The notes under the pieces were generated by a model. It searched no databases, was not told where the DNA came from, and worked only from the letters and a program-made list of their open reading frames with translations. From Octopus sinensis (Eukaryota), in the NCBI RefSeq assembly GCF_006345805.1, contig NW_021824399.1, positions 1 to 18,837 on the forward strand: a stretch of 18,837 bases of DNA. Direction: 5' to 3'. Below are positions 640-16,160 of the stretch, piece by piece. The stretch's first letter is position 1; each line of letters starts with the position of its first letter. The translations under genes and the position numbers were made by a program.

Positions 640-1170
640 GCGTTTGTTTTAGAAAAGCGACAAGTAGATAAGAATATTCTGTGGGTGTTGTCAGGACATA
701 TGAAAAATAAAGTTTTGGTAATATAATAGAAGTCGAGGACATGAAATCGTGATTAAGGTCGTGATTTCAGATCCTGGGACGAGTGATGTTTTGTGCGCAG
801 AACAATTCATCTTATGTTGCACAGCGACCATTTCAACACTCGACGTGTAGGAATGGTGACTAGCTGGAAAATGGATTTATTTTCCGGATATTAAAGAATT
901 TTAGCCAATCACATACATCAAGAAAAATACTGCCACTCTCGTTTTAAAAATAATTAGAGAATTATTACAACAGGGTATTTCATTCAGTATGCTTTTCGGA
1001 TAGCACCTGGAAGGTTGAGACAAAAAACTTATATGAGGCAATAGAATATTCCGATAAGTGGATAAAACATTTAATTTCTGTCAAAAATTCAAACCGAAGT
1101 CATATTTGGGGCCGGCTCTATAAAGGTAAATCAATTTTTGTTACTTTTCTTTTAAGATTTAACATTTGTA
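640..1170. repeat. Dispersed duplicated segment V, copy 1 (diverged copy at 9505-10070, fragment at 8050-8110)
   Basis: Shared anchors in colinear order: agtagataagaa, ttattttccggatattaaag, atgagg-aatagaa-attc-gataagtggataaa, gaagtcatatttg, gtaaatcaatttttg. Confidence 0.8.
1026..1125 (+). pseudogene. Decayed exon-like segment of an unidentified gene (NLYEAIEYSDKWIKHLISVKNSNRSHIWGRLYK), ending at the donor AAG|GTAAAT
   Basis: The copy at 8062-8088 differs by synonymous changes (gca/gcc, tcc/tca). The copy at 9919-9945 reads EVIENSDKW. The GT donor is at 1126. Confidence 0.35.
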
Positions 1171-1865
1171 TCTACACACACATGTATATATGATTTATTT
1201 TTCCCTCTCTCTCTATCTTTCTATAACTATGCAAATTAATACAATTAAGTTGTTCCTGACGATCATTTGTCGGTGAGATTTTGGTTCCAAGCAACCATAA
1301 CGTTGTTACATGCACTTCAGAATTATTATTCAAACATTTCTTTGTCCTGTTCATCCTATATATAGACTTCTACATAAACACATATGCATAGGCGTGGCTG
1401 TGTGGTAAGAAACATGCTTCACAAGCAGATAGTTCCAGGTTCAGTTTCACTGCATGGCAATTTGGGAAAGTGTCTTCTACTATAACCTCAGACCGACCAA
1501 AGCCTTACGAGTGGATTTGGTAGACGGAAACCGAAAGAAGTGCGTTCTATATGTATCTATATATATTGAAGCATATATGTGTTTGTGTGTTGTGTGTGAG
1601 TTTGTTTTGTTTGTATGTGTGTTTCTGTCTTTGCGACTATGTTTGTTACCCATTCATATCTTGACAGCAAGTTTTTTAAGGCCCCTCCTTAACATTGCGG
1701 TTCGGCAAAAGCGGCCAATAAAATAAGTACTTGGCTTACAAAGAATAAGCTCTGATGTCAATTTATTGGGCTTAAAGGCTTTTGATATGGTGCTCCAGCA
1801 TGACCGTGGGCAAATGACTTCAACACGTAAAGGAATTTAAAGAATAAGAATACACCTTTATATGT
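1127..1865. repeat. Dispersed duplicated segment Y including its SINE (matches 6281-7060)
   Basis: Colinear homology from aaatc...ttttcttttaagatttaacattt through the SINE, which sits at the same position (after atgcata) in both copies. Confidence 0.9.
1391..1850 (+). mobile_element. tRNA-derived SINE, octopus-type family A (head, core, microsatellite, tail module)
   Basis: A-box-like TGGCTGTGTGG at 1395-1405 and B-box-like GGTTCAGTTTC at 1438-1448. Core gtgtcttctactata...gagtggatttggtagacggaaac and tail aataagtac...gtgctccagcatg...caaatgact. Multiple homologous copies occur in the window. Confidence 0.85.
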
Positions 1866-2052
1866 GTGTGTGCGCATGCGTGTGTGTATATATATAAATG
1901 CGTATGAATATATAAATATACTTATATACCTATATAATATATGTGTGTGGTGTGTGTGGTGTGAGTGTTTTGCCTCGTACACATGTGCATGATTTCCAAC
2001 ACACATGTAGACACACGCTCACATATACATTCATATATATATGAATATATAT

Positions 2053-3603
2053 AGACCACAAAGACATTTCGAAAATAAACCGTCGGTCCGTTTGATTAAC
2101 CCCCAAGTCTGACACATCGGATCGTCAGCAAGAAGATCCTGGACAGGATTTTACCAAAAATGCGTGAAGCTTCACCCCTTCCACTCTGGAATAGGACCAC
2201 CGGCAATAACCTGGTTCCGGGATTTACCAGATAAAAGCAACACCCGATTCCTACAACGGGATATCGAGGATTACTACGCCTCTATATCGAGAGCTTGCTG
2301 ATCGATGCGATTAACTTCGCCATAGGTCCTCCACCATCACCGAGGCCGAGCAAGATGTGATCCTCCACGCACGTAAGACTTTTCTTTTCTATGACGGATC
2401 CCACTGGATCAACAAAAAATCTGTGACCCCCTTCGACGTCACATGGGTGCTAACGACTCTGCTGAAATAAGTGACCTAGTGGGCCTTTTCATCCTCCATA
2501 GGCGAAAACCCTATTCACAGGCCTCTCCGGTGGTCTTTACCGAGATGACGCCTTTTCGCCCTCCACAATATAAACCCCGGACCACGGATGGGTTCCGGAA
2601 AAACCTTCACACCTTCTTTAAAAACTTAGGCCTAGGATTACCCTAGAATCCAACTTAACAAAGCTAACTTCCTCGATGTCACCCTCGACCTAAAAACCTC
2701 ACTTTATTACCGTACCACAAACCAATGAATTCCCTTAGATATATAGATATCAATTCCAACCACCCCAAAAATATTAGATAACCTAGTAAAAAGTGTCTCA
2801 ATTAGAATCTCTAGCCTGTCCGCCACGGAAGATATCTTTAAAGCCGCAGCCCCCTATTACAACGAGGCCCTGGCCCGCAGTGGTTTTAAAGATAAGATTA
2901 CCTACACTAGTATAGCCCCACGCCAACCCAGGAAAAATAGACGAAGACACATTAGCTGGTACAACCCCCCTTCAACCGTGAGGTCGCTACACCTGTAGCA
3001 AGATCTTTTCACTCTCCTACAGAACACTTCCACCCAACATAAGTACTACAACTATCCTAAATAAGAACACTATTAGACTCTCCTACTCTACCACGCCAAT
3101 CTAGCCAGGAACCTAGCAACAACATGTGAAAAAAAAACTTAAAATATCTACTTTCCTCCGGGGCCCATCCAACGTCCGATAGCAGTTGCAACTGCCATGA
3201 TAAAACCACATGCCCCTCAACAAACAACTGCCTACAGAGGGACCTAGTATATAAATGCGAGGTAAGATCAGGCCTTGACGATAAAAGTAAATCCTACATT
3301 GGAATGACGTCACAGCTTTTTAAGACCCGCTGGTACGCACATACACACTCGTTCCGGCGACAGGATAAATCCAACCAACTACCCTCGCCGCCCACATCTG
3401 GTACCTTAAAAGAACTCTATCCCCTTCAAGACCAAGTGGAAACTACTACAGAAGGCGCGCTCGTACACAGGAGGACATACCTGCTGTGACCTATGCTATC
3501 AGAGAGCCTAGAGATCTTGTTCGCCAAAGGCCCTCTCCTTAACAAATTTTCAGAACACTCCCCAAATTGCATGCATAAAAGTATGCGAACTACAAGACTA
3601 TAG
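2053..3603 (+). mobile_element. Penelope-like element (PLE), 5'-truncated: reverse transcriptase plus C-terminal GIY-YIG endonuclease, heavily frameshifted
   Basis: Motifs in order: FDVT/MGANDSAEISDLVGLFIL (2432-2496), GLYRDD (YRDD at 2538-2549), NFLDVTLDL (2666), SNHP, WYNPP, CNCHDKTTCPSTNNC (3187-3231), LVY (3244-3252), YIG (3295-3303), FKTRWYAH, CDLC, LLNKFSEHSPNCMH, and stop TAG at 3601-3603. Confidence 0.92.
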
Positions 3604-3704
3604 ACCTACCCGCAACTGATTGATGACAACCCCCCCCACACAAACCCCCCACCCCACTGTTCCCCTAGCACCCCCGATTACCTTTTCTCCTAAGACCTTT
3701 CACA

Positions 3705-3858
3705 TATTGTATGTGCACGCTTGTATATGTGTATCGTATGTATGTATATATGTATAGAAATGCATGGGTACAGTAGGAATATACGCATGTATTATGTGTG
3801 TGTGTGTGTATGTATGCATGTAAAAAAATATATATATGTATATATGTTTGCATATATG

Positions 3859-3897
<39 letters not shown>

Positions 3898-4408
3898 GCT
3901 TGTATGTGTGTGTGTGTGTGTATATATGTATATGTGTTTGTATGTATATGTGTATATACGTGTAAATGTATGTGTTTTTGTATGTGTATGTATGTATAAA
4001 ATATTTATAACTAGGGCTTAGTAAAATAAAATAAATTGCTTTGCCACATGCTAAACTTTCTGGAAATAGCGGCCAATAAGGGGTTTTAGCCTCTTCCACT
4101 ACTTAGAGAATTTTTTCCCTCTAACATTGTTTACTCAAAATAATAATGGTCCCTTTACATACTGAATTCTTGGTGAATCTGATTAATAACTAATTAACTT
4201 TACCCTCCCTTGTTGATACATATATATATATGTGTGTGTGTACATGTATGTATATATATGTGTGTGAGTGTATGTGTGTATGTATGTATTTGTATATGTG
4301 TGTGTGTATATGTATGTGCGCGCGTGAGTGTGTATGCATGTGTATGTATATTTGTATATGTATGTGCATGTGTATGTATATGTGTATGTATGTGTATATG
4401 TATGTATA

Positions 4409-4453
<45 letters not shown>

Positions 4454-4621
4454 ATGTGTATGTGTGTGTATATATGTGTGTGTATATGTGTATTATGTAC
4501 GTATTTATATAGATATGTAATCTTTGTATATATATGTATGTATATGCATCTGTCTGTGTGTGTGTATGTGTATATATGTGTATCATTATTGCGTATGTAT
4601 GCATGTATATGTGTATATGTA

Positions 4622-4656
<35 letters not shown>

Positions 4657-4677
4657 GTATATATGTGGGGGTATATG

Positions 4678-4710
<33 letters not shown>

Positions 4711-5059
4711 GTATATGTATGTAGTGTGTGTATGTATTGTGTATATATGTATATATATATATAATATGTGTGTATATATGTTTGTGTATGTATATATGTG
4801 TGTGTATGTGTGTGTATATATATGGGTGTGTGTGTATGTATGTATATATATCTATATATATATATATATATATGTATGTATAATATGTATATATATAATA
4901 TGTGTATATGTATGTGTGTGTATGTATATATATATATAGGTATGTATCTGTATGTAGGAGTATATATGTGTGTGTGTGTGTGTATTGTATTGTGGTATAT
5001 ATATATTATATAATATATATATATGTATATATATGTATATTTATTGGTGTATATATATA
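3705..5059. repeat. Compound (TA)n/(TG)n microsatellite fields (about 3705-4000 and 4215-5059)
   Basis: Directly visible dinucleotide mosaics. They produce the YI/CV-repeat ORFs in the supplied track. Confidence 0.95.
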
Positions 5060-5359
5060 GACTAGCCTCCTAAAGTGTAGACATGAATCTGTAGGTACGA
5101 GTACGTATGTGTATATACGTGAACGTATGTAGATGTTTGTATGTATGAATATAACGCGTGCGTACGTGTATGTGTATGAGTGTACGAATGGGTGTATGTA
5201 CGTGCTAATGAGTGTGCGTGCGGAACGAGTACTTGCCTTCTAGTAGACAGACAATTGGACATGCTGCCATCGCCAGGATCCTTAGCTCTAGCGATCAAAG
5301 ATACAAAAGTAATAAATGAAGATAATAAAATTAAAATTAGGGATGGGCCTGTATTGGAT

Positions 5360-5610
5360 TGTGTATATATATATGGTGTGTATGTATATATGTGTATATA
5401 TATATATATATATTATATATATATATATAATATATATGTTGTGTATGTGTGTATGTGTAGGTATGTATAGGCACACATGTGTACGTATGTGTGTGTGTGT
5501 ATGTATATGTGTTTATGTATGTATGTGCACACATTTTATTTTTTTTATTTTTTTTTTTATTTTATTTTTTATTTTTTATTATTTTATTATTTTATTATTT
5601 TTTTTTTATT
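5360..5610. repeat. (TA)/(TG) microsatellite followed by a T-rich (TTTTA)n-like tract
   Basis: Directly visible. Confidence 0.9.
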
Positions 5611-5756
5611 TATCTATCCTTCATCTAACTTACCACTGACTCCTTGACCACTCCCCCAAGTATGATATTTTGCGCTATGCCTACCCCCAAAAAGTCCCCA
5701 CCACCACTCCTTTAAACCTGCCTAAATGTATAAATGCTAATACAATTCTTGTTAAT

Positions 5757-5805
5757 AGCTTCCTGAAGATTTCTTGAATGAAACAGTACTAGTCCTGTAG
5801 AAGCT
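5757..5805 (+). ncRNA. Type I hammerhead ribozyme (solitary), predicted cleavage GUA^ after 5799
   Basis: Stem I AGCUUC (5757-62)/GAAGCU (5800-05) is a perfect 6 bp. Core CUGAAGA at 5763-69. Stem II is U.U plus UUC[UU]GAA. GAAA at 5780-83. Stem III is ACAG/CUGU with loop UACUAGUC. Confidence 0.8.
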
Positions 5806-5810
5806 CCTTC

Positions 5811-5829
5811 TATATAATAAATTATATAT

Positions 5830-5863
<34 letters not shown>

Positions 5864-5970
5864 ATATATATATACATATATATACATATATATATTTATA
5901 TATATATATATACATAATATATATTTATATATATATACATATATATATTTATATATATATATATATATAC
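5811..5970. repeat. (TA)n microsatellite immediately downstream of the hammerhead
   Basis: Directly visible. Confidence 0.95.
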
Positions 5971-6056: not shown

Positions 6057-6279
6057 ATGCATCTTTATATAACCATACATGATTACGTATGACCCCGCGT
6101 AGAAATTCTTCGTCCTAAAGTCCTAGATTGCCGCCTATAAAGTGGTTTCTGGGTTAGGTAGATTGCCAGTGGTTGTGTTTTGTGGGGGAATTGGACAGTC
6201 GACTAATTGGACTTCAGCACCTCTGAGAAATGAAAGGCAAAGGGTAGTTCGACAGGAAAGGAAATCAGAATGCGAATAG
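6057..6279. repeat. Dispersed duplicated segment X, copy 1 (matches 8490-8714)
   Basis: gcatctttatataaccatac...cagtcgactaattggacttcagcacctctgagaaatgaaa...gcgaatag is present in both places. Confidence 0.9.
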
Positions 6280-6544
6280 ATAAATCGAGTTTTGTTATTT
6301 TTCTTTTAAGATTTAACATTTATATACACACACACACATACATATGATTTATTTTTCCATCCCTCTCTATCTTTCTATAACTATGCAACTTAATAGAATA
6401 ACGTTGTTCCTGACAGTGATTTGTCGGTGAGCATTTGGTTCCAAGCAACCATAACGTTGTTACACGCACGTAAGAAATATTAGTTAAACATTTGATCGTC
6501 CTCTTCATCCTGTTTATAGACGTCTACATAAACACACATGCATA

Positions 6545-7047
6545 GGCGTGGCTATGTGGCAAGAAGCTTGCTCCGCAAGCACATAGGTCCAGGTTTCGTT
6601 TCCCTGCTTGGCAACCTGGGAAAGTGTCTTCTACTATAACCTCGGGCCGAGCAAAGACTTGTGAGTGGCTTTAGTAGACGGACCCGAAGGAAATCCGTTA
6701 TATATATATATATATATACATATGTGTGTGTGAGTGTGTCTGTGAGTGTATGTGTGGTGCGCGCGCGCGCGTGTGTGTGTGAGAGCGTGTGTGTGTGTGT
6801 GTTTACCTGTGTGCGTGTGTGTCTGTGTGACTATGTTCACTTCCCGTTCACAGCTTGAGAGCAGTTCTTTTACTCCCGCCTTAACATAGTTGTTCGGCAA
6901 AAGCGACCAATAAAATATGTACCAGGCTTACAAAAACTAAGCCCAACTGTAAATTTCTTCGGCTCTTCGGCTTAAAGGATTTTCAGGTGGTACTCCAGCA
7001 AGGCCGCAGTCAAATGACTTAAACAAGTAAAAGAATTAAAGAGAATA
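6545..7047 (+). mobile_element. tRNA-derived SINE family A, within duplicated segment Y
   Basis: ggcgtggctatgtggcaagaagcttgc head, gtgtcttctactataacctcgggccga core, microsatellite, and tail gtactccagcaaggccgcagtcaaatgac. Confidence 0.85.
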
Positions 7048-7312: not shown

Positions 7313-7651
7313 CGAACGTACTCAGACAATCTAAAGTTTTTTGTGTATATCGAATAATAATAAATTGGTATGCGGATGCTCAAGTGAACAACTTAGGGAA
7401 TTAGTACAGTCTTTAACCTCTAGTACCTACATCTGCTGTGTGAGTCCTGTGGCAAGTTACACAGGGTGAACTGGGCGTCCCTAAACATTCGAGGCTATGT
7501 TTTACTTGAGATAACCCATGTACATGAAGGTTACAATATACTAAACACACATGCAGAGTAAACCACGTAGAATATCACTTTCATTCTTCTGCTAGTAGCA
7601 GAATAATTCAATCCTAGATGTCATTTAATAAATTGATGCTTCATCTTGATA

Positions 7652-8200
7652 GTAAGGTCGGACTTATATTTCGGAAAGATCTATAAAAATTAACATCCAC
7701 ATCATGTGATGTATTAGAATAATGATTGTCGGTGTAGGTTTCAGGACTAGTGAATGTCCATTACTTGAACATTTGCGCTATCAGCCCTATCGTAAGCATT
7801 TGAGACAATGATATTCAATTGTCTCACACCCTACCGATTTAACCAAGGAAAGAACACAACACATATTGTGAAGTAAGTAAATCGACGGGATGATCATGAC
7901 CGAAACGCCTCTGATCATAGCCTTGTCATCAGTGAACAACAAGCATAATTTACAATCAACTGAAATATATTCTGGGAAAGGAGGGAAATTCGTCGGGTTT
8001 GCATTTTAGTAACTAGTGAAATGAGATATCGCCATCCCAATAATCGATGAAAAACTTATATGAGGCCATAGAATATTCAGATAAGTGGAGAAAACTTATT
8101 TAATTTCTGACGATAATTTGTCGGTGAGCATTTGGTTCCAAGCAACCATAACACACCCCCCCCCTTAACATAGCGGATCGGCAAAAGTGACCAATAAAAT
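7652..8200. repeat. Internally deleted copy of the Z-V-Y segment
   Basis: 7652-8046 matches 217-627, 8050-8110 matches 1023-1082, 8107-8152 matches 1256-1300, and 8160-8200 matches 1685-1726. Confidence 0.85.
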
Positions 8201-8714: not shown

Positions 8715-9504
8715 CCGACAGAAACGCTGCAAAGCAATTTGTAAATTTGTGTACAGGCATTGTGTACAGACATTGCCGACTATTTTGCTTGGATATTCTT
8801 GTTTAATATTATCTTTTTAATTTAAGCTCTATACTTTTTAACTGTACAACTTATTTTTTCATTCGAAAGTCCTGCGGGGATGGGAAGATGGCGAAGCATT
8901 CAGATCTGAGGTGGTGGAAGCATGTATTTAGTGGTCTACACACAAGTGTCCTATGGGTTTGTGGTTGCATGTGTGCTGAAGCAGTTGAATTCATGGAAAA
9001 TCCTGCTCACCTAGAGACCGGAGACAATGCTATATAACTAAATGGATGGGAAGATGACGACTGGATGTCCTCTGACCATAGCTTTACTCAATCAGGAAAC
9101 ATTGGCTTGTGACGCAGATATGTTTACAATGTTTTCCATCAAACACCTGGAGATACTGCGAAATCTCTTTCCAATCACACACTCTTATTTTAGACAATGG
9201 AGGACATGGTTGCTAATGTTTGAATAAAGATAATTAGTAGGGTATAATTGGAATGCCTTTGTGCAAAATTAGGATCAGTCAGGGCAAACAACAACGTCGA
9301 CAACAACACCCTAAGTAAAACACAAAAAAACAAACAAAGATATGTACCTAAAATTGGCCTCGTTCTCAGACTGTATCACCACATCAAACAACGCAATTTT
9401 CTGCGTCAGACTTTCTATCATTACATGATACAACGCCATATCGTTAGCTGACAAGAGACATCACTTAGGAGTAACGCTCAGATTTTTCTCGGGATCCATG
9501 TAAA

Positions 9505-10070
9505 TTCAGTGGGTGTTGCTTCGGGAAAACGCCTAGTAGATAAGAAGGATTCTGGGATGCTGTCCCACCTATGTCATATAACATGTTAAATAATATAATT
9601 GGTGTCCAAGGCGAATGACCACGCTGTTAACGGTGTTACATTCGCGATAGCGAGATCGCTGTTTCAATTCCCGTAAAGGGAATTGTATTGCGTTCTTAAG
9701 CAAATCACCTCATCTTATATTACTTTGCGTCGTGTAAAAATGGTGAATTTCTTAAAAATGGAATTATTTTCCGGATATTAAAGTACAGCGAATAACATAC
9801 ATCGACAGAAAATACTGACACTGCCGTTAAAAAAACACATAACGGGTTATAAAAAATTTGTACTTCGGTCAGTATTCTTATCCGATAAAAGCCGCAAAAT
9901 GAGACAATAAACTTTCATGAGGTAATAGAAAATTCAGATAAGTGGATAAACCTTTTCTAATTTCTGTAAAAAATTAATACTGAAGTCATATTTGAAACCG
10001 GCATTGTAAATGTAAATCAATTTTTGCTACTTTCCTGTAAATATTTAAAATTGATATTTATACACACACA
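9505..10070. repeat. Diverged copy of segment V
   Basis: Colinear with 640-1170. Confidence 0.75.
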
Positions 10071-10662
10071 TATCTACACTGGCGAGATTAAATTTAAGAC
10101 CGATGATAATAATCCTATTTCTAACAGAATATTTTGTTACTAACACCATACAAATTATTTCTAACTTTTACACTTTATGGAGACTTTATTTCTCTTTGGA
10201 ATGATGCAGACAATAACTATTTTTATACAACTTGAAGAATGCATGAAAGTACTAGTTCAATCAGAGTGGATATTTGATATTCTATCGCTTCATTATGTTA
10301 TCTTATCATATCATATATTATTATAGGATTGTAAATAAATCATGAAAATCAAAGTTGGAATTTCTTACAGTGATATATTCTCCTATACACAATCATACAT
10401 ACCTGTGTATAAGTGCATATATATATATATATATATAGCTAGCTACCCGATAATTTCTTGTTAAGATCCCTTATTAAGAGATTATCCTTAATTGTTAAAC
10501 TTATTCCGAAATACTTTTCATTACCCGACATGCAGTTCGTATAAAGCCCGCCATTTACCGGATATATGATTTATAAACATTCCATGTGCTTGGCCGGAGT
10601 GAACAGTTGTCTGTTCGTCTTCGCTACATAAGGTTGGTTTATTTATGATGTATTCAGAATCA

Positions 10663-10718
10663 GTTCTGCTGACGATCATTAGACGCAAGTTGTATGTGAA
10701 ATCACGGTGATACAGAAC
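10663..10718 (+). ncRNA. Type I hammerhead ribozyme, array unit 1; predicted cleavage AUA^ after 10712
   Basis: Stem I GUUCUG/CAGAAC, extended by GAAU/AUUC beyond an internal loop. Core CUGACGA at 10669-75. Stem II is CAU/AUG plus GAC[GCAA]GUU. GAAA at 10698-701. Stem III is AUCA[CGG]UGAU. Confidence 0.88.
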
Positions 10719-11141
10719 ATAATTCATTTTTAAATGTCTTGCTTTGAAAAACTGCATTTGGGTATGATTAGTATAATTTTTGGTAGTAATGACTTTGTCC
10801 CTCCTAGTGTGAGGCATTTATGTGTAATAATGCCCTTTATACAATATAGATATAATTAATTTGTTCAAAGGAAAAAAATTATTTTCGGATTCTTTTCTTT
10901 TATGAGGTTTTCACGCTAGCTACCCGATAATTTCTTGTTAAGATCCCTTATTAAGAGATTATCCTTAATTGTTAAACTTATTCCGAAATACTTTTCATTA
11001 CTACCGACATGCAGTTCGTATAAAGCCCGCCATTTACCGGATATATGATTTATAAACATTCCATGTGCTTGGCCGGAGTGAACAGTTGTCTGTTCGTCTT
11101 CGCTACATAAGGTTGGTTTATTTATGATGTATTCAGAATCA

Positions 11142-11198
11142 GTTCTGCTGACGATCATTGATACGCAAGTTGTATGTGAAATCACGGTGATACAGAAC
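11142..11198 (+). ncRNA. Type I hammerhead ribozyme, array unit 2; cleavage after 11192
   Basis: Same fold with an intact core. Small variation in distal stem II. Confidence 0.85.
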
Positions 11199-11609
11199 AT
11201 AATTCATTTTTAAATGTCTTGCTTTGAAAAACTGCATTTGGGTATGAATAGTATAATTTTTGGTAGTAATGACTTTGTCCCTCCTAGTGTGAGGCATTAT
11301 GTGTAATATGCCCTTATACAATATAGATATAATTAATTTGTTCAAAAGAAAAAATTATTTTCGGATTCTTTTCTTTTATGAGGTTTTCACGCTAGCTACC
11401 CGATAATTTCTTGTTAAGATCCTTATTAAGAGATTATCCTTAATTTAAACTTATTCCGAAATACTTTTCATTACCCGACATGCAGTTCGTATAAAGCCCG
11501 CCATTTACCGGATATATGATTTATAAACATTCCATGTGCTTGGCCGGAGTGAACCAGTTCTGTTCGTCTTCGCTACATAGGTTGGTTTATTTATGATGTA
11601 TTCAGATCA

Positions 11610-11664
11610 GTTCTGCTGACGATCATTAGACGCAAGTTGTATGTGAATCACGGTGATACAGAAC
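11610..11664 (+). ncRNA. Hammerhead, array unit 3, with GAAA read as GAA
   Basis: Same motif, but one A is missing from the core (gtgaatcac). This is either an inactive copy or a homopolymer error. Confidence 0.65.
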
Positions 11665-12078
11665 ATAATTCATTTTTAAATGTCTTGCTTTGAAAAACTG
11701 CATTTGGGTATGATTAGTATAATTTTTGGTAGTAATGACTTTGTCCCTCCTAGTGTGAGGCATTTATGTGTAATAATGCCCTTTATACAATATAGATATA
11801 ATTAATTTGTTCAAAAGAAAAAATTATTTTCGGATTCTTTTCTTTTATGAGGTTTTCACGCTAGCTACCCATAATTTCTTGTTAAGATCCCTTATTAAGA
11901 GATTATCCTTAATTGTTAACTTATTCCGAATACTTTCATTACCCGACATGCAGTTCGTATAAAGCCCGCCTTTACCGGATATATGATTTATAAACTTCCA
12001 TGTGCTTGGCCGGAGTGAACAGTTGTCTGTTCGTCTTCGCTACATAAGGTTGGTTTATTTATGATGTATTCAGAATCA

Positions 12079-12132
12079 GTTCTGCTGACGATCATTAGAC
12101 GCAAGTTTATGTGAATCACGGTGATACAGAAC
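12079..12132 (+). ncRNA. Hammerhead, array unit 4, with GAAA read as GAA
   Basis: Same motif with one core A and one stem II G missing. Confidence 0.65.
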
Positions 12133-12549
12133 ATAATTCATTTTTAAATGTCTTGCTTTGAAAAACTGCATTTGGGTATGATTAGTATAATTTTTGGTAG
12201 TAATGACTTTGTCCCTCCTAGTGTGAGGCATTTATGTGTAATAATGCCCTTTATACAATATAGATATAATTAATTTGTTCAAAAGAAAAAATTATTTTCG
12301 GATTCTTTTCTTTTATGAGGTTTTCACGCTAGCTACCCGATAATTTCTTGTTAAGATCCCTTATTAAGAGATTATCCTTAATTGTTAACTTATTCCGAAA
12401 TACTTTTCATTACCCGACATGCGTTCGTATAAAGCCCCCATTTACCGGATATATGATTTATATAACATTCCATGTGCTTGCCGGAGTGAACAGTTGTCTG
12501 TTCGTCTTCGCTACATAAGGTTGGTTTATTTATGATGTATTCAGAATCA

Positions 12550-12605
12550 GTTCTGCTGACGATCATTAGACGCAAGTTGTATGTGAAATCACGGTGATAC
12601 AGAAC
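12550..12605 (+). ncRNA. Type I hammerhead ribozyme, array unit 5; cleavage after 12599
   Basis: Identical to the unit 1 motif. Confidence 0.88.
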
Positions 12606-13018
12606 ATAATTCATTTTTAAATGTCGTTGCTTTGAAAAACTGCATTGGGTATGAATAGTATAATTTTTGGTAGTATGACTTTGTCCCCCTAGTGTGAGGC
12701 ATTTATGTGTAATAATGCCCTTTATACAATATAGATATAATTAATTTGTTCAAAAGAAAAATTATTTTCGGATTCTTTTCTTTATGAGGTTTTCACGCTA
12801 GCTACCCGATAATTTCTTGTTAAGATCCCTATTAAGAGATTATCCTTAATTGTTAAACTTATTCCGAAATACTTTTCATTACCCGACATGCAGTCGTATA
12901 AAGCCCCTCCATTTACCGGATAAATAGAGTTATAAACATTCCATGTGCTGGCCGAGTGAACAGTTGTCTGTTCGTCTTCGCTACATAAGGTGGTTTATTT
13001 ATGATGTATTCAGAATCA

Positions 13019-13074
13019 GTTCTGCTGACGATCATTAGACGCAAGTTGTATGTGAAATCACGGTGATACAGAAC
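13019..13074 (+). ncRNA. Type I hammerhead ribozyme, array unit 6; cleavage after 13068
   Basis: Identical to the unit 1 motif. Confidence 0.88.
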
Positions 13075-13331
13075 ATAATTCATTTTTAATGTCTTGCTTT
13101 GAAAAACTGCATTTGGGTATGATTAGTATAATTTTTGGTAGTAATGACTTTGTCCCTCCTAGTGTGAGGCATTTAGGTGTAATAATGCCCTTTATACAAT
13201 ATAGATATAATTAATTTGTTCAAAAGAAAAAATTATTTTCGGATTCTTTTCTTTTATGAGGTTTTCACGCTAGCTACCCGATAATTTCTTGTTAAGATCC
13301 CATTATTAAGAGCTTATCTTAATTGATTAAC

Positions 13332-13343
13332 TATATATATATA

Positions 13344-13387
<44 letters not shown>

Positions 13388-13534
13388 TATATGTATATAA
13401 TATGTATGTATAAGGATATTATTGCTTACAATATTATCAAGTGTCAAGCATGCGTAAAAAAATGCCATAAGGTAGGCATTATTAATTAATGATAAAGTTC
13501 CTACAAGCAGCACCAGCACACTAAAAATAGCATT

Positions 13535-15480: not shown

Positions 15481-15635
15481 TCAATGTGTAGGAGAAATAA
15501 AACAAACACAGCATCACTCACTAATGGACACCATGTTAATGGTTTTAAAACAATATATAAGTGAACGGCTTGGAGAGTGTTTCATCTTTATGCGTGTTTC
15601 CTTGGATTGAATCTGTGTAGGGGGGCATGTTTAGT

Positions 15636-15787
15636 GCGCGGCTGTGTGGTAAGACGCTTGCTTCCAAATTGGATTCGGGTTCAGTTCCACTGCGTGGCAC
15701 GCTACAAAATGTCTTCTACTGTAGCCATTGGACTCTCAAAATCTTCATATGTGGATTTGGTAGATGGAAACGGAAAGAAGCCTATCG
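15636..15787 (+). mobile_element. SINE family A head and core
   Basis: gcggctgtgtggtaagacgcttgcttcc...gggttcagttccactgcgtggcac...gtggatttggtagatggaaac. Confidence 0.85.
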
Positions 15788-15794
15788 TGACTAT

Positions 15795-16160
15795 TCTTTT
15801 ACTTGTTTCAGTCATTTGACTGCGGCCATGTTGGAGCTCCGCCTTTAGTCGAACAAATCGACCCTAGGACTTAACCTTTGTAATCTGTAGTTATTTATTC
15901 TATCAGTTTCTTTTCCAGAACCGCTATGTTACAGGGACGTAAGCACACACAACATCGGTTGTCAAATGATGGTGGAGGGACAAATATAGACAACACACTA
16001 CACACACAACATACGACGGGCTTATTTGAGTTTCCATCTCTGAAATCCACTCACAGACTATGGTCGGCCCTTGGCTATAGTAGACGACACTCAGCCAAAA
16101 TGTCCTCGCAACGGGGACTGAACACGGAACCATTGTGTTTCATACTCTACGGCCACTTCT
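15795..16160 (-). mobile_element. SINE family A, near full length, minus strand
   Basis: The tail cttttacttgtttcagtcatttgactgcggccatg, core atacgacgggct...aatccactcac and B-box ggactgaacac are all seen in reverse complement. Confidence 0.85.

What the first reader, a model, noticed from the sequence alone, without database searches (positions are those of the whole stretch)
10438..13331. Retrozyme-like array: six ~475 bp tandem units, each with a type I hammerhead ribozyme
Seen in sequence: what looks like a plain satellite carries, once per unit, GUUCUG-CUGACGA-U-CAU(UA)GAC[GCAA]GUU(GU)AUG-U-GAAA-UCA[CGG]UGA-UA^-CAGAAC. It has a perfect 6-bp stem I extended past an internal loop (GAAU/AUUC), a GNRA-capped stem II and both conserved core strands. 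Predicted cleavages fall after 10712, 11192, 11658, 12126, 12599 and 13068, giving 466-480 nt monomers. Established: hammerhead-bearing tandem repeats (newt satellite 2, Schistosoma Sm-alpha, Dolichopoda pDo500, metazoan non-LTR retrozymes) self-process into monomers and circRNAs. Inference: this is such a family in a cephalopod-like genome. I do not recognise it as a described element.
Basis: partly seen in the sequence, partly recalled or inferred. Interest (0 to 1): 0.92.

Follow-up and report, generated by a model that had tools for sequence, protein, structure and literature searches.

The report
Hammerhead-ribozyme tandem repeat (animal retrozyme)
A six-copy, 476-bp tandem repeat carries one self-cleaving "hammerhead" RNA motif per copy, of the type found in Penelope-like jumping genes, which makes it a fairly ordinary new example of an animal "retrozyme", though nobody has yet shown that it cuts itself.

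Summary
The array is real: 10438-13330, 6.1 copies, 476-bp consensus, 33% GC. Each unit holds a type I hammerhead-like motif. The core is intact in units 1, 2, 5 and 6. Units 3 and 4 read GAA instead of GAAA, possibly through assembly error.

The motif is non-canonical, with U·U at 10.1/11.1 and an AUA triplet. Rfam finds nothing and a strict descriptor fails. The same window, however, holds a degraded Penelope-like element (RT/GIY-YIG remnant, 2059-3582) with its own U·U hammerhead at 5756-5806. Among 69 distinct hammerheads flanking relatives of that element in 85 outside loci, U·U is the commonest state (39).

A covariance model built only from outside sequences scores the array at 21.7-22.2 bits (E about 7e-4). 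Noise reaches 13.4 bits at most; family members score 27.7-56.6. Rfam also misses the best family members.

The consensus monomer is unusually self-paired (z = -5). Helix III is a palindrome that favours a double hammerhead. The array sits inside (TA)n, the preferred Penelope target, and the unit encodes nothing.

Verdict: a retrozyme-type non-autonomous element carrying a Penelope-type hammerhead, so a new member of a known kind. Cleavage, circles, copy number and host are untested.

The parts
10438..13331 (+). Tandem array: six full 466-480 bp units plus a 63-nt partial seventh. The consensus unit is 476 nt, GC 0.33, and non-coding.
   Evidence: TRF; unit alignment A1; consensus; no PLE coding similarity
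10657..10725 (+). Unit 1 hammerhead with stem I extension. Core intact; predicted cleavage after 10712.
   Evidence: Relaxed descriptor; R1 21.7 bits, E 7.7e-4
11136..11205 (+). Unit 2 hammerhead. Core intact, distal stem II altered (UAGAC to UGAUAC); predicted cleavage after 11192.
   Evidence: R1 22.2 bits, E 5.6e-4
11605..11671 (+). Unit 3 hammerhead. As assembled, GAAA reads GAA and GAAU reads GAU, so the core is broken or mis-assembled. Nominal cleavage after 11658.
   Evidence: R1 16.7 bits, E 0.019
12073..12139 (+). Unit 4 hammerhead. As assembled, GAAA reads GAA and one G is missing from stem II. Nominal cleavage after 12126.
   Evidence: R1 17.4 bits, E 0.012
12544..12612 (+). Unit 5 hammerhead, identical to the consensus; predicted cleavage after 12599.
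   Evidence: 21.7 bits
13013..13081 (+). Unit 6 hammerhead, identical to the consensus; predicted cleavage after 13068.
   Evidence: 21.7 bits
10415..10437 (.). (TA)n tract abutting the left end of the array.
   Evidence: Sequence
13332..13412 (.). (TA)n tract abutting the right end of the array. With the left tract, it shows the array lies inside a TA microsatellite.
   Evidence: TRF; junction print; (TA)n is a preferred PLE target (PMC8557442)
2059..3582 (+). Degraded Penelope-like element ORF, frameshifted and with stops. [quoted passage not shown]
   Evidence: Stitched query gives homologues at E 1.6e-51; tblastn of those homologues back to the window gives E down to 1e-29; alignment A2
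5756..5806 (+). Solo PLE-type hammerhead, AGCUUC-CUGAAGA-U-UU[CUUG]AA-U-GAA-ACAG[UACUAGUC]CUGU-A^GAAGCU. It lies downstream of the PLE ORF on the same strand and is followed by (TA)n at 5811-5969.
   Evidence: Descriptor; R1 31.8 bits, E 1.3e-6, within the family range

Best explanation
The array is a non-autonomous, non-coding retroelement of the animal 'non-LTR retrozyme' kind, and its once-per-unit ribozyme is a Penelope-like-element (PLE) type I hammerhead.

Proposed cycle:
1. The plus strand is transcribed as a multimer.
2. Helix III (AUCAC-G-GUGAU) is too weak as a hairpin, so hammerheads of two units pair through this palindrome into a double hammerhead.
3. Each cuts after A17 of AUA^C, releasing ~476-nt monomers with 5'-OH and 2',3'-cyclic phosphate ends.
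4. A host RtcB-type tRNA ligase closes them into highly base-paired circles.
5. A PLE reverse transcriptase/GIY-YIG nuclease acting in trans copies the circle more than once around and inserts the multimer into a (TA)n microsatellite. This gives an array whose ends are out of phase with the cleavage site (six units plus 63 nt).

Shown here: the motif and its family resemblance, the predicted folds, the (TA)n flanks, the absence of coding capacity, and a PLE of the same hammerhead type nearby. Inferred, not shown: transcription, cleavage, circularisation and mobilisation.
For: Motif: 4 of 6 units pass a type I descriptor once a 10.1/11.1 mismatch is allowed, against 0 hits in 300 window shuffles and 0 in 40 Mb at the observed quality.

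Independent model: CM R1, built only from 35 outside hammerheads, scores the array units at 21.7-22.2 bits (E about 6-8e-4) and 16.7-17.4 bits for the two damaged units. The next best window hit is 10.7 bits. In 195 kb of outside loci searched on both strands, noise is at most 13.4 bits.

The U·U is natural. Relatives of the window's PLE ORF carry hammerheads on the ORF strand 66-316 nt after the ORF, and on both sides of it at 2.36-2.53 kb spacing. There are 43 descriptor hits against 0.8 expected, 41 of them on the ORF strand. Of 69 distinct model-detected motifs, 39 have U·U and 20 have G-C. Helices I and II covary.

Same window: PLE ORF remnant at 2059-3582 and its U·U hammerhead at 5756-5806 (31.8 bits).

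Folds: the monomer gives z -5.4 linear and -5.0 circular, is 68% paired, and keeps stem I, its extension and stem II; the minus strand gives z -3.1. Sixteen control segments give z from +1.8 to -3.65. Helix III scores -0.2 kcal/mol as a hairpin and -13.9 as a duplex, and the homodimer scores -29.3 against 2 x -9.1.

Context: (TA)n on both sides, which is the reported PLE insertion bias (PMC8557442). The unit has no PLE coding or DNA similarity.

Field criteria are met: units 1-2 and 5-6 are consecutive complete hammerheads, and the fold is -9 to -11.7 kcal/mol. Size and copy number are within reported ranges of 51-972 bp and mostly at most 7 units. PLE hammerhead traits described in PMC4209133 match: an extra nucleotide after A9, a large helix II, a palindromic helix III and action as dimers.
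Against: No Rfam hammerhead hit, even at E<=10. The control shows Rfam also misses the best family members, so this carries little weight.

The isolated motif folds no better than shuffles (z +1.27).

The array's R1 score lies below every bona fide family member (27.7-56.6 bits). It departs from the family at 15.2/16.2 (U-A in the simple register, C-G in 67 of 69) and uses the rare AUA triplet.

G10.1, whose N7 helps bind a catalytic metal in canonical hammerheads (my own knowledge), is absent. PLE minimal hammerheads showed only low activity in vitro (PMC4209133).

Two of six cores are broken as assembled. The hammerhead region is not clearly better conserved than the rest of the unit, at 1.7% against 2.5% differences.

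No second locus of this unit was found anywhere, so there is no covariation or copy-number evidence for this particular family. The unit shows no similarity to the neighbouring PLE.
Confidence: 0.78

Rival explanations
1. Fossil retrozyme. The array did arise from a hammerhead-bearing, PLE-related element, but it is now an inert satellite maintained or expanded by unequal crossing-over, and its ribozyme no longer cleaves. It shares its origin with the best explanation and differs only in present activity.
For: Two of six cores are broken as assembled. There is no extra conservation of the hammerhead region. The features are non-canonical (U·U, AUA) and the score is intermediate. The neighbouring PLE is heavily degraded. 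PLE-type hammerheads have low activity in vitro (PMC4209133).
Against: Four cores are intact and three are identical. Substitutions between units are few, and most differences are 1-nt deletions, 21 of 32 in homopolymers, which looks like long-read assembly error rather than decay. The consensus monomer keeps a strongly non-random fold (z -5), and it is stronger than that of an assembled copy (z -2.8).
Confidence: 0.15
2. An ordinary satellite in which a hammerhead-like string arose by chance. The relaxed motif is a false positive of the kind that minimal descriptors are known to produce.
For: The strict descriptor and Rfam both fail. The motif alone has z +1.27. The relaxed descriptor gives about 0.1 hits per Mb per strand in random sequence, which means hundreds per large genome. 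PMC6155905 warns about relaxed searches.
Against: At the observed stem quality there were 0 hits in 40 Mb, so roughly 2e-5 or less per 476-nt unit. An independently trained model scores the array 8 bits or more above all noise in 390 kb. The unusual traits (U·U, palindromic helix III, A17) are the ones typical of PLE hammerheads. The tandem context, the monomer fold, the (TA)n flanks and the nearby PLE are further independent coincidences.
Confidence: 0.04
3. Not an independent element, but part of an autonomous PLE: tandemly reiterated pLTR or extremely 5'-truncated PLE copies.
For: PLE insertions are often partial tandems with heavy 5' truncation (PMC8557442). The hammerhead is of PLE type. 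Many Xenopus retrozymes are homologous to pLTRs.
Against: There is no coding or DNA similarity between the unit and PLE proteins, the window's PLE or 85 outside PLE loci. The array is bounded on both sides by (TA)n with no adjoining ORF. Outside PLE units are 2.36-2.53 kb, not 0.48 kb.
Confidence: 0.03

Closest known systems
Metazoan non-LTR retrozymes (Cervera & de la Pena 2020, PMC7229834; Li, Clavereau & Pollet 2026 preprint, 10.64898/2026.07.22.740005)
   Same: Head-to-tail repeats of a few hundred bp, low GC, no coding capacity, and one type I hammerhead per unit. The monomer is predicted to be highly self-paired. They co-occur with PLEs. Copy number per locus (at most 7 in most families) and consensus length (51-972 bp) both bracket this array.
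   Different: At 476 nt the unit is above the 170-400 nt range of the experimentally shown circles. The hammerhead is not the canonical form with G10.1-C11.1 and loop-loop contacts; it has U·U, an AUA triplet and a 5-bp palindromic helix III. Expression, circles and multi-locus dispersal are not shown here.
Minimal hammerheads in the pLTRs of Penelope-like elements (Cervera & de la Pena 2014, PMC4209133)
   Same: An unpaired nucleotide directly after A9, a longer than usual helix II, a small palindromic helix III implying action as a dimer, and sequence-variable stems. The array's motif is detected by a model trained on such PLE-linked motifs.
   Different: That paper reports a highly conserved G10.1-C11.1, whereas here and in 39 of 69 outside motifs the position is U·U. 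The array's stem I is longer (6 bp plus an extension), helix II has two internal mismatches and a GNRA cap, and no PLE ORF is attached.
Newt satellite 2, Schistosoma Sm-alpha and Dolichopoda pDo500 hammerhead satellites
   Same: Transcribed tandem satellites with one type I hammerhead per unit. The newt ribozyme also needs a double-hammerhead form because helix III is weak (PMC6155905).
   Different: No sequence relationship was found. Those carry canonical cores recognised by Rfam Hammerhead_1, and this one is not recognised.
Plant LTR retrozymes (PMC4918200)
   Same: Non-autonomous retroelements processed by hammerheads into circular RNAs.
   Different: They have type III hammerheads inside LTRs, a PBS and PPT, 600-1000 nt circles, GC above 55%, and are mobilised by Ty3/gypsy-type elements. 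None of these features is present here.

Membership tests
Hammerhead ribozyme, type I | Conserved core strands C3-U-G-A-N-G-A9, G12-A-A14, A15.1-U16.1 and H17 (not G) | tested here: met
   Present in units 1, 2, 5 and 6. Units 3 and 4 read GAA in place of GAAA as assembled.
Hammerhead ribozyme, type I | Three helices around the core, with helix I open and helices II and III capped | tested here: met
   Stem I is 6 bp plus a 4-bp extension. Helix II is capped by GCAA. Helix III is 4-5 bp. Supported by the descriptor, the CM alignment and the circular minimum-energy fold, which contains stems I and II.
Hammerhead ribozyme, type I | G10.1-C11.1 (or at least a paired 10.1/11.1) | tested here: not met
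   It is U·U and the strict descriptor fails. The same state occurs in 39 of 69 distinct PLE-linked hammerheads, so it is a natural variant rather than a disqualifier.
Hammerhead ribozyme, type I | Match to a curated Rfam hammerhead model | tested here: not met
   No hit at gathering score or at E<=10. As a control, Rfam also misses outside family members that score up to 56.6 bits with R1.
Hammerhead ribozyme, type I | Site-specific self-cleavage | not testable with these tools
   Needs in vitro transcription of monomer and dimer constructs.
PLE-associated hammerhead family (model R1, built here from outside loci) | Significant score with a covariance model trained without the candidate | tested here: met
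   The array scores 21.7-22.2 bits, E about 6-8e-4. Noise is at most 13.4 bits in 390 kb and members score 27.7-56.6 bits. The array is therefore an outlying relative, while the solo motif at 5756-5806 (31.8 bits) is a typical member.
PLE-associated hammerhead family (model R1, built here from outside loci) | C15.2-G16.2 and a GUH triplet | tested here: not met
   The array has AUA. C-G occurs in 67 of 69 outside motifs. The CM accommodates the array by inserting a U-A pair.
Metazoan non-LTR retrozyme | Tandem repeat of a few hundred bp with low GC | tested here: met
   476-bp unit, 6.1 copies, GC 0.33. This is within 51-972 bp and slightly above the 150-450 bp of PMC7229834.
Metazoan non-LTR retrozyme | [quoted passage not shown] | tested here: met
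   Units 1-2 and 5-6 qualify. Motif minimum free energy is -9.1 to -11.7 kcal/mol. Met only with a descriptor that tolerates the 10.1/11.1 mismatch.
Metazoan non-LTR retrozyme | No coding capacity, LTRs, PBS or PPT | tested here: met
   The longest consensus ORF is 98 aa, with no homologue in 5.8 billion proteins. There is no PLE protein similarity.
Metazoan non-LTR retrozyme | Expressed as linear and circular monomer RNAs | not testable with these tools
   Only a prediction is available: the monomer has z -5.0 as a circle.
Metazoan non-LTR retrozyme | Dispersed in many loci of the genome, showing mobility | tested here: inconclusive
   There is no other copy in the window and none in the metagenome, viral or protein collections. 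The host genome is not available here. (TA)n on both flanks is consistent with insertion.
Penelope-like element (for 2059-3582 plus 5756-5806) | One ORF with a reverse transcriptase and a GIY-YIG endonuclease | tested here: met
   Homologues have the YRDDG RT motif, a CNC..CP..C linker and a YIG..FK.R..H..SF nuclease. tblastn back to the window gives E down to 1e-29. Pfam itself recognises only HTH_animal in the homologues and nothing in the degraded frames.
Penelope-like element (for 2059-3582 plus 5756-5806) | Hammerhead in flanking direct repeats (pLTRs) on the ORF strand | tested here: inconclusive
   The downstream hammerhead is present (31.8 bits). No upstream one was found (best 7.1 bits), which is consistent with 5' truncation but not proven.

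The most novel reading that the evidence does not exclude
The U10.1·U11.1 hammerhead is a functional core-adjacent variant that has not been formally described. It would be the majority form in a compact (about 2.4-2.5 kb) Penelope-like clade abundant in marine eukaryote DNA, and it would be shared by this retrozyme. If so, the canonical G10.1 metal-binding contact is dispensable when the ribozyme works as a double hammerhead, and current curated models and strict descriptors are systematically blind to a large class of animal hammerheads and retrozymes.
Probability: 0.25. Interest if true: 0.55.

Novelty: new member of a known kind. Interest (0 to 1): 0.35.

Why it matters
By itself this adds one more family to an already large and widespread class, animal retrozymes. 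It would matter mostly to whoever annotates this genome: the array should be labelled as a ribozyme-bearing retroelement rather than a plain satellite, and its RNA may be an abundant small circle.

The wider point is methodological. The hammerhead is invisible to Rfam and to strict descriptors, and so are dozens of clearly real hammerheads flanking Penelope-like elements in outside loci. The reason is that the pair next to the core is usually U·U in this lineage. This suggests that retrozyme and hammerhead censuses undercount such elements. It also gives a concrete, testable question about how much the 10.1/11.1 pair matters in dimeric hammerheads. [quoted passage not shown]

Tried and rejected
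- **Rfam.** Gathering thresholds on the whole window and E<=10 on the array gave no hammerhead. I first read this as evidence against the motif. I rejected that reading after controls showed Rfam also misses outside PLE hammerheads.
- **Thermodynamics of the isolated motif.** z = +1.27. This is uninformative because helix III is built to pair between molecules.
- **Finding more copies.** All attempts were empty: exact look-ups of two array ORFs, an exact 22-mer in metagenome and viral contigs, and a homology search with the 98-aa spurious ORF of the consensus. There is therefore no covariation test for this particular family.
- **Pfam on the degraded frames at 1900-3700.** Nothing found. The PLE was recovered only through a stitched query.
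- **Similarity between the unit and the rest of the window or the outside PLE loci.** Only chance-level hits. One was a 17-of-21 match between the unit's start and the 5' half of the solo hammerhead (E = 3.6), rejected as not significant.
- **Extra conservation of the hammerhead within the array.** 1.7% against 2.5% differences; six near-identical copies give too little power.
- **tRNA-derived SINE idea.** No tRNAs in the window.
- **Literature search for the motif string.** No paper holds it.
- **Host identification.** No conserved gene lies in the window, so 'cephalopod-like' remains a guess.
- **Infernal default filters.** On the pooled 353-kb search they dropped all window hits. Scores with filters off are the ones used.
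Full report

Tandem Repeats Finder reports a single long-period array at 10438-13330: period 469, 6.1 copies, 96% matches and 3% indels. Units start at 10438, 10915, 11391, 11860, 12328 and 12797, and a 63-nt partial unit starts at 13269. The majority consensus is 476 nt with GC 0.33.

All six quoted cleavage coordinates are correct, as are the 466-480 nt intervals. Two details were missed. First, units 3 and 4 read GAA rather than GAAA, and each has one further deletion in the motif. Second, the position next to the core, 10.1/11.1, is a U·U mismatch rather than the canonical G-C.

Differences between units are biased towards deletions: 32 deletions (21 in homopolymer runs), 7 insertions and 28 substitutions. 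This looks like long-read assembly error, so the two broken cores may not be real. I cannot settle that without reads.

**2.

- Rfam finds no hammerhead at gathering thresholds in the window, or at E<=10 in the 3-kb array.
- The isolated motif folds no better than shuffles (z = +1.27).
- A strict type I descriptor that requires a paired 10.1/11.1 finds nothing. A descriptor that tolerates that mismatch finds units 1, 2, 5 and 6.

Chance is nonetheless low. There were 0 hits in 300 dinucleotide shuffles of the window. In 40 Mb of Markov background there were 4 relaxed hits, and 0 at the observed stem quality. That is below about 0.001 per window and about 2e-5 or less per satellite unit. A gigabase genome would still hold some chance motifs, so independent evidence was needed.

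**3. The surroundings supply that evidence.**

A looser scan found a second hammerhead-like motif at 5756-5806 on the plus strand, also with U·U at 10.1/11.1. The plus-strand frames of about 2000-3700 showed reverse-transcriptase and GIY-YIG signatures. Pfam did not recognise them. A stitched query did find homologues (E = 1.6e-51). Their alignment shows the following:
- the YRDDG motif of reverse transcriptase;
- FLDVT and SNHP motifs;
- a CNC..CP..C knuckle;
- a C-terminal GIY-YIG nuclease.

RT plus GIY-YIG is the Penelope-like element (PLE) architecture. tblastn of those proteins back to the window maps the remnant to 2059-3582 (+), with E down to 1e-29.

About 1.8 kb of microsatellite (3787-5613) now separates the ORF from the solo hammerhead. 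Without it the spacing would be roughly 230 nt, similar to intact relatives.

**4. Comparative test.**

I fetched five contigs encoding those homologues and 80 further loci from metagenome assemblies (266 kb).

The relaxed descriptor gave 43 hits against 0.8 expected. Of these, 41 were on the ORF strand, typically 66-316 nt after the ORF. In several contigs they lay on both sides of the ORF at 2.36-2.53 kb spacing. This is the pLTR/head-to-tail arrangement described for PLEs (PMC4209133; PMC8557442).

An alignment of 35 distinct motifs shows invariant CUGANGA, GAAAC and GU. It also shows covarying helices: 85% of cells paired against 35-44% with slid partners, and changes on both sides at every pair of helices I and II. 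Part of this is circular, because the descriptor demanded pairing. The pairs it did not demand are still 77-94% paired.

Among 69 distinct motifs later collected with the model, 10.1/11.1 is U·U in 39, G-C in 20, A-U in 4, G·U in 4 and A·A in 1. Helix III is a 4-5 bp palindrome around 0-2 central bases.

**5. Independent membership test.**

A covariance model (R1) built only from the 35 outside sequences was run on the window with filters off.

| Target | Score | E-value |
|---|---|---|
| Solo motif 5756-5806 | 31.8 bits | 1.3e-6 |
| Array units 1, 2, 5, 6 | 21.7-22.2 bits | about 6-8e-4 |
| Array units 3, 4 | 16.7-17.4 bits | 0.01-0.02 |
| Best unrelated window hit | 10.7 bits | 0.87 |

For empirical calibration I searched 195 kb of outside loci on both strands. 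True members score 27.7-56.6 bits, one probably degenerate member scores 17.2, and everything else scores 13.4 or less. The array is thus well above noise but below all typical members, so it is a diverged relative.

Its departures are these:
- an AUA rather than GUH triplet; the model inserts a U-A pair into helix III;
- N7 = C, seen in 4 of 69 family members;
- a longer helix II with two internal mismatches and a GCAA cap.

AUA is a known natural triplet in the ELVd hammerhead (PMC1636495 abstract).

As a control on Rfam, it misses all outside motifs at gathering score and the best four loci at E<=10. Its silence on the array therefore says little.

**6. The predicted RNA.**

Cut at AUA^C, the 476-nt consensus monomer has an MFE of -125.3 kcal/mol, against -94.3 ± 5.7 for dinucleotide shuffles (z = -5.4). 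As a circle it gives -119.8 (z = -5.0). It is 68% paired, and stem I, its extension and stem II are all present in the fold. The minus strand gives z = -3.1.

Sixteen other 476-nt segments of the window range from z = +1.8 to -3.65. An assembled copy with its indels gives -2.8. The consensus is therefore the most structured sequence tested, in line with the 'highly self-paired' circles of retrozymes (PMC7229834).

Helix III scores -0.2 kcal/mol as a hairpin and -13.9 as a duplex of two copies. The homodimer folds into a double hammerhead at -29.3, against 2 x -9.1. This is the dimer mechanism known for newt and PLE hammerheads (PMC6155905; PMC4209133).

**7. Insertion context and autonomy.**

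The array is bounded by (TA)n on both sides: 10415-10437 and 13332-13412. The solo PLE hammerhead also abuts (TA)n, at 5811-5969. PLE endonucleases are reported to prefer microsatellites, notably (TA)n (PMC8557442).

The unit has no similarity to PLE proteins, to the window's PLE, or to the 85 outside loci. Its longest ORF has no homologue. It is therefore non-autonomous, not a truncated PLE.

**8. Comparison and verdict.**

The array meets the working definition used in the field: a TRF repeat, a type I hammerhead in at least two consecutive units, and a fold below -5 kcal/mol. It falls within the reported size and copy ranges. It differs from experimentally studied retrozymes in carrying a PLE-type rather than a canonical hammerhead.

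I file it as a new member of a known kind. The best explanation is a retrozyme-type element processed by a double hammerhead and mobilised by a PLE into (TA)n (confidence 0.78). The main rival is that it is now a fossil (0.15). Chance (0.04) and 'part of a PLE' (0.03) are unlikely.

Cleavage, circular RNA, genomic copy number and host identity are untested. Microsatellites make up about 15% of the window, which fits a decapod crustacean as well as a cephalopod. PMC4209133 notes shrimp PLE hammerheads with a palindromic helix III.

Interest is modest (0.35). The most interesting by-product is that U·U hammerheads appear to be common and invisible to curated models.

Noticed in passing
window 2059-3582 (+) and 5756-5806 (+): A degraded Penelope-like element (RT plus GIY-YIG, frameshifted) with a PLE-type U·U hammerhead downstream on the same strand. 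No upstream hammerhead or pLTR was found.
   Followed up: yes
window 3787-5613: About 1.8 kb of TG/TA-type microsatellite lies between the PLE ORF remnant and its hammerhead. This looks like expansion inside the element's 3' region, because intact relatives have only 66-316 nt there.
   Followed up: partly
L006-L085 and L001-L005 (outside loci): These are compact PLE-like units with a hammerhead-to-hammerhead period of 2.36-2.53 kb (for example L024, L025, L030, L050, L059, L061, L062, L063), abundant in marine and other metagenome assemblies (353 relatives). Their hammerheads are mostly U·U at 10.1/11.1, and Rfam detects none of them.
   Followed up: partly
alignment A2 (P0001-P0008), columns about 345-352; window about 3070-3100: The PLE-like proteins share an invariant WFNPP(Y/F) motif between the RT tail and the nuclease. 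It resembles motif IV (N/DPPY/F) of N6-adenine methyltransferases. P0003 gives a weak, sub-threshold Pfam Dam hit (E = 7e-4, 19.7 bits against a cut-off of 28.1).
   Followed up: no
alignment A4 (outside hammerheads): One motif reads UUGAAAA in place of CUGANGA. This is the U3-A8 core covariation reported for Cercyon PLEs in PMC4209133. Another reads UUGAUGA.
   Followed up: no
window 1124-1423 and 6278-6577; 211-415 and 7646-7850: Two pairs of dispersed direct repeats, 86% and 93% identical, of unknown class. ORF fragments at 1454-1726 and 15577-15819 also share a 'VDLVDGN.KK' peptide, which suggests another interspersed repeat.
   Followed up: no
window 10440-10460 against 5756-5776: The first 21 nt of the satellite unit (TAGCTACCCGATAATTTCTTG) match the 5' half of the solo hammerhead (TAGCTTCCTGAAGATTTCTTG) at 17 of 21 positions. 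With E = 3.6 this is not significant, but its position is curious.
   Followed up: partly
window 9500-9975: This segment folds unusually well for the window (z = -3.65). Only short palindromes were found there, so the result is unexplained.
   Followed up: partly
whole window: Microsatellites ((TA)n, (TG)n, (AG)n, (ATA)n, T-rich) cover roughly 15% of the window. No tRNA or conserved gene is present, so the host cannot be identified here and 'cephalopod-like' is unverified.
   Followed up: partly
window, model R1: Infernal's default filters dropped all seven window hammerhead hits, including the 31.8-bit one, when the window was pooled with 335 kb of loci. The filters-off search found them.
   Followed up: yes
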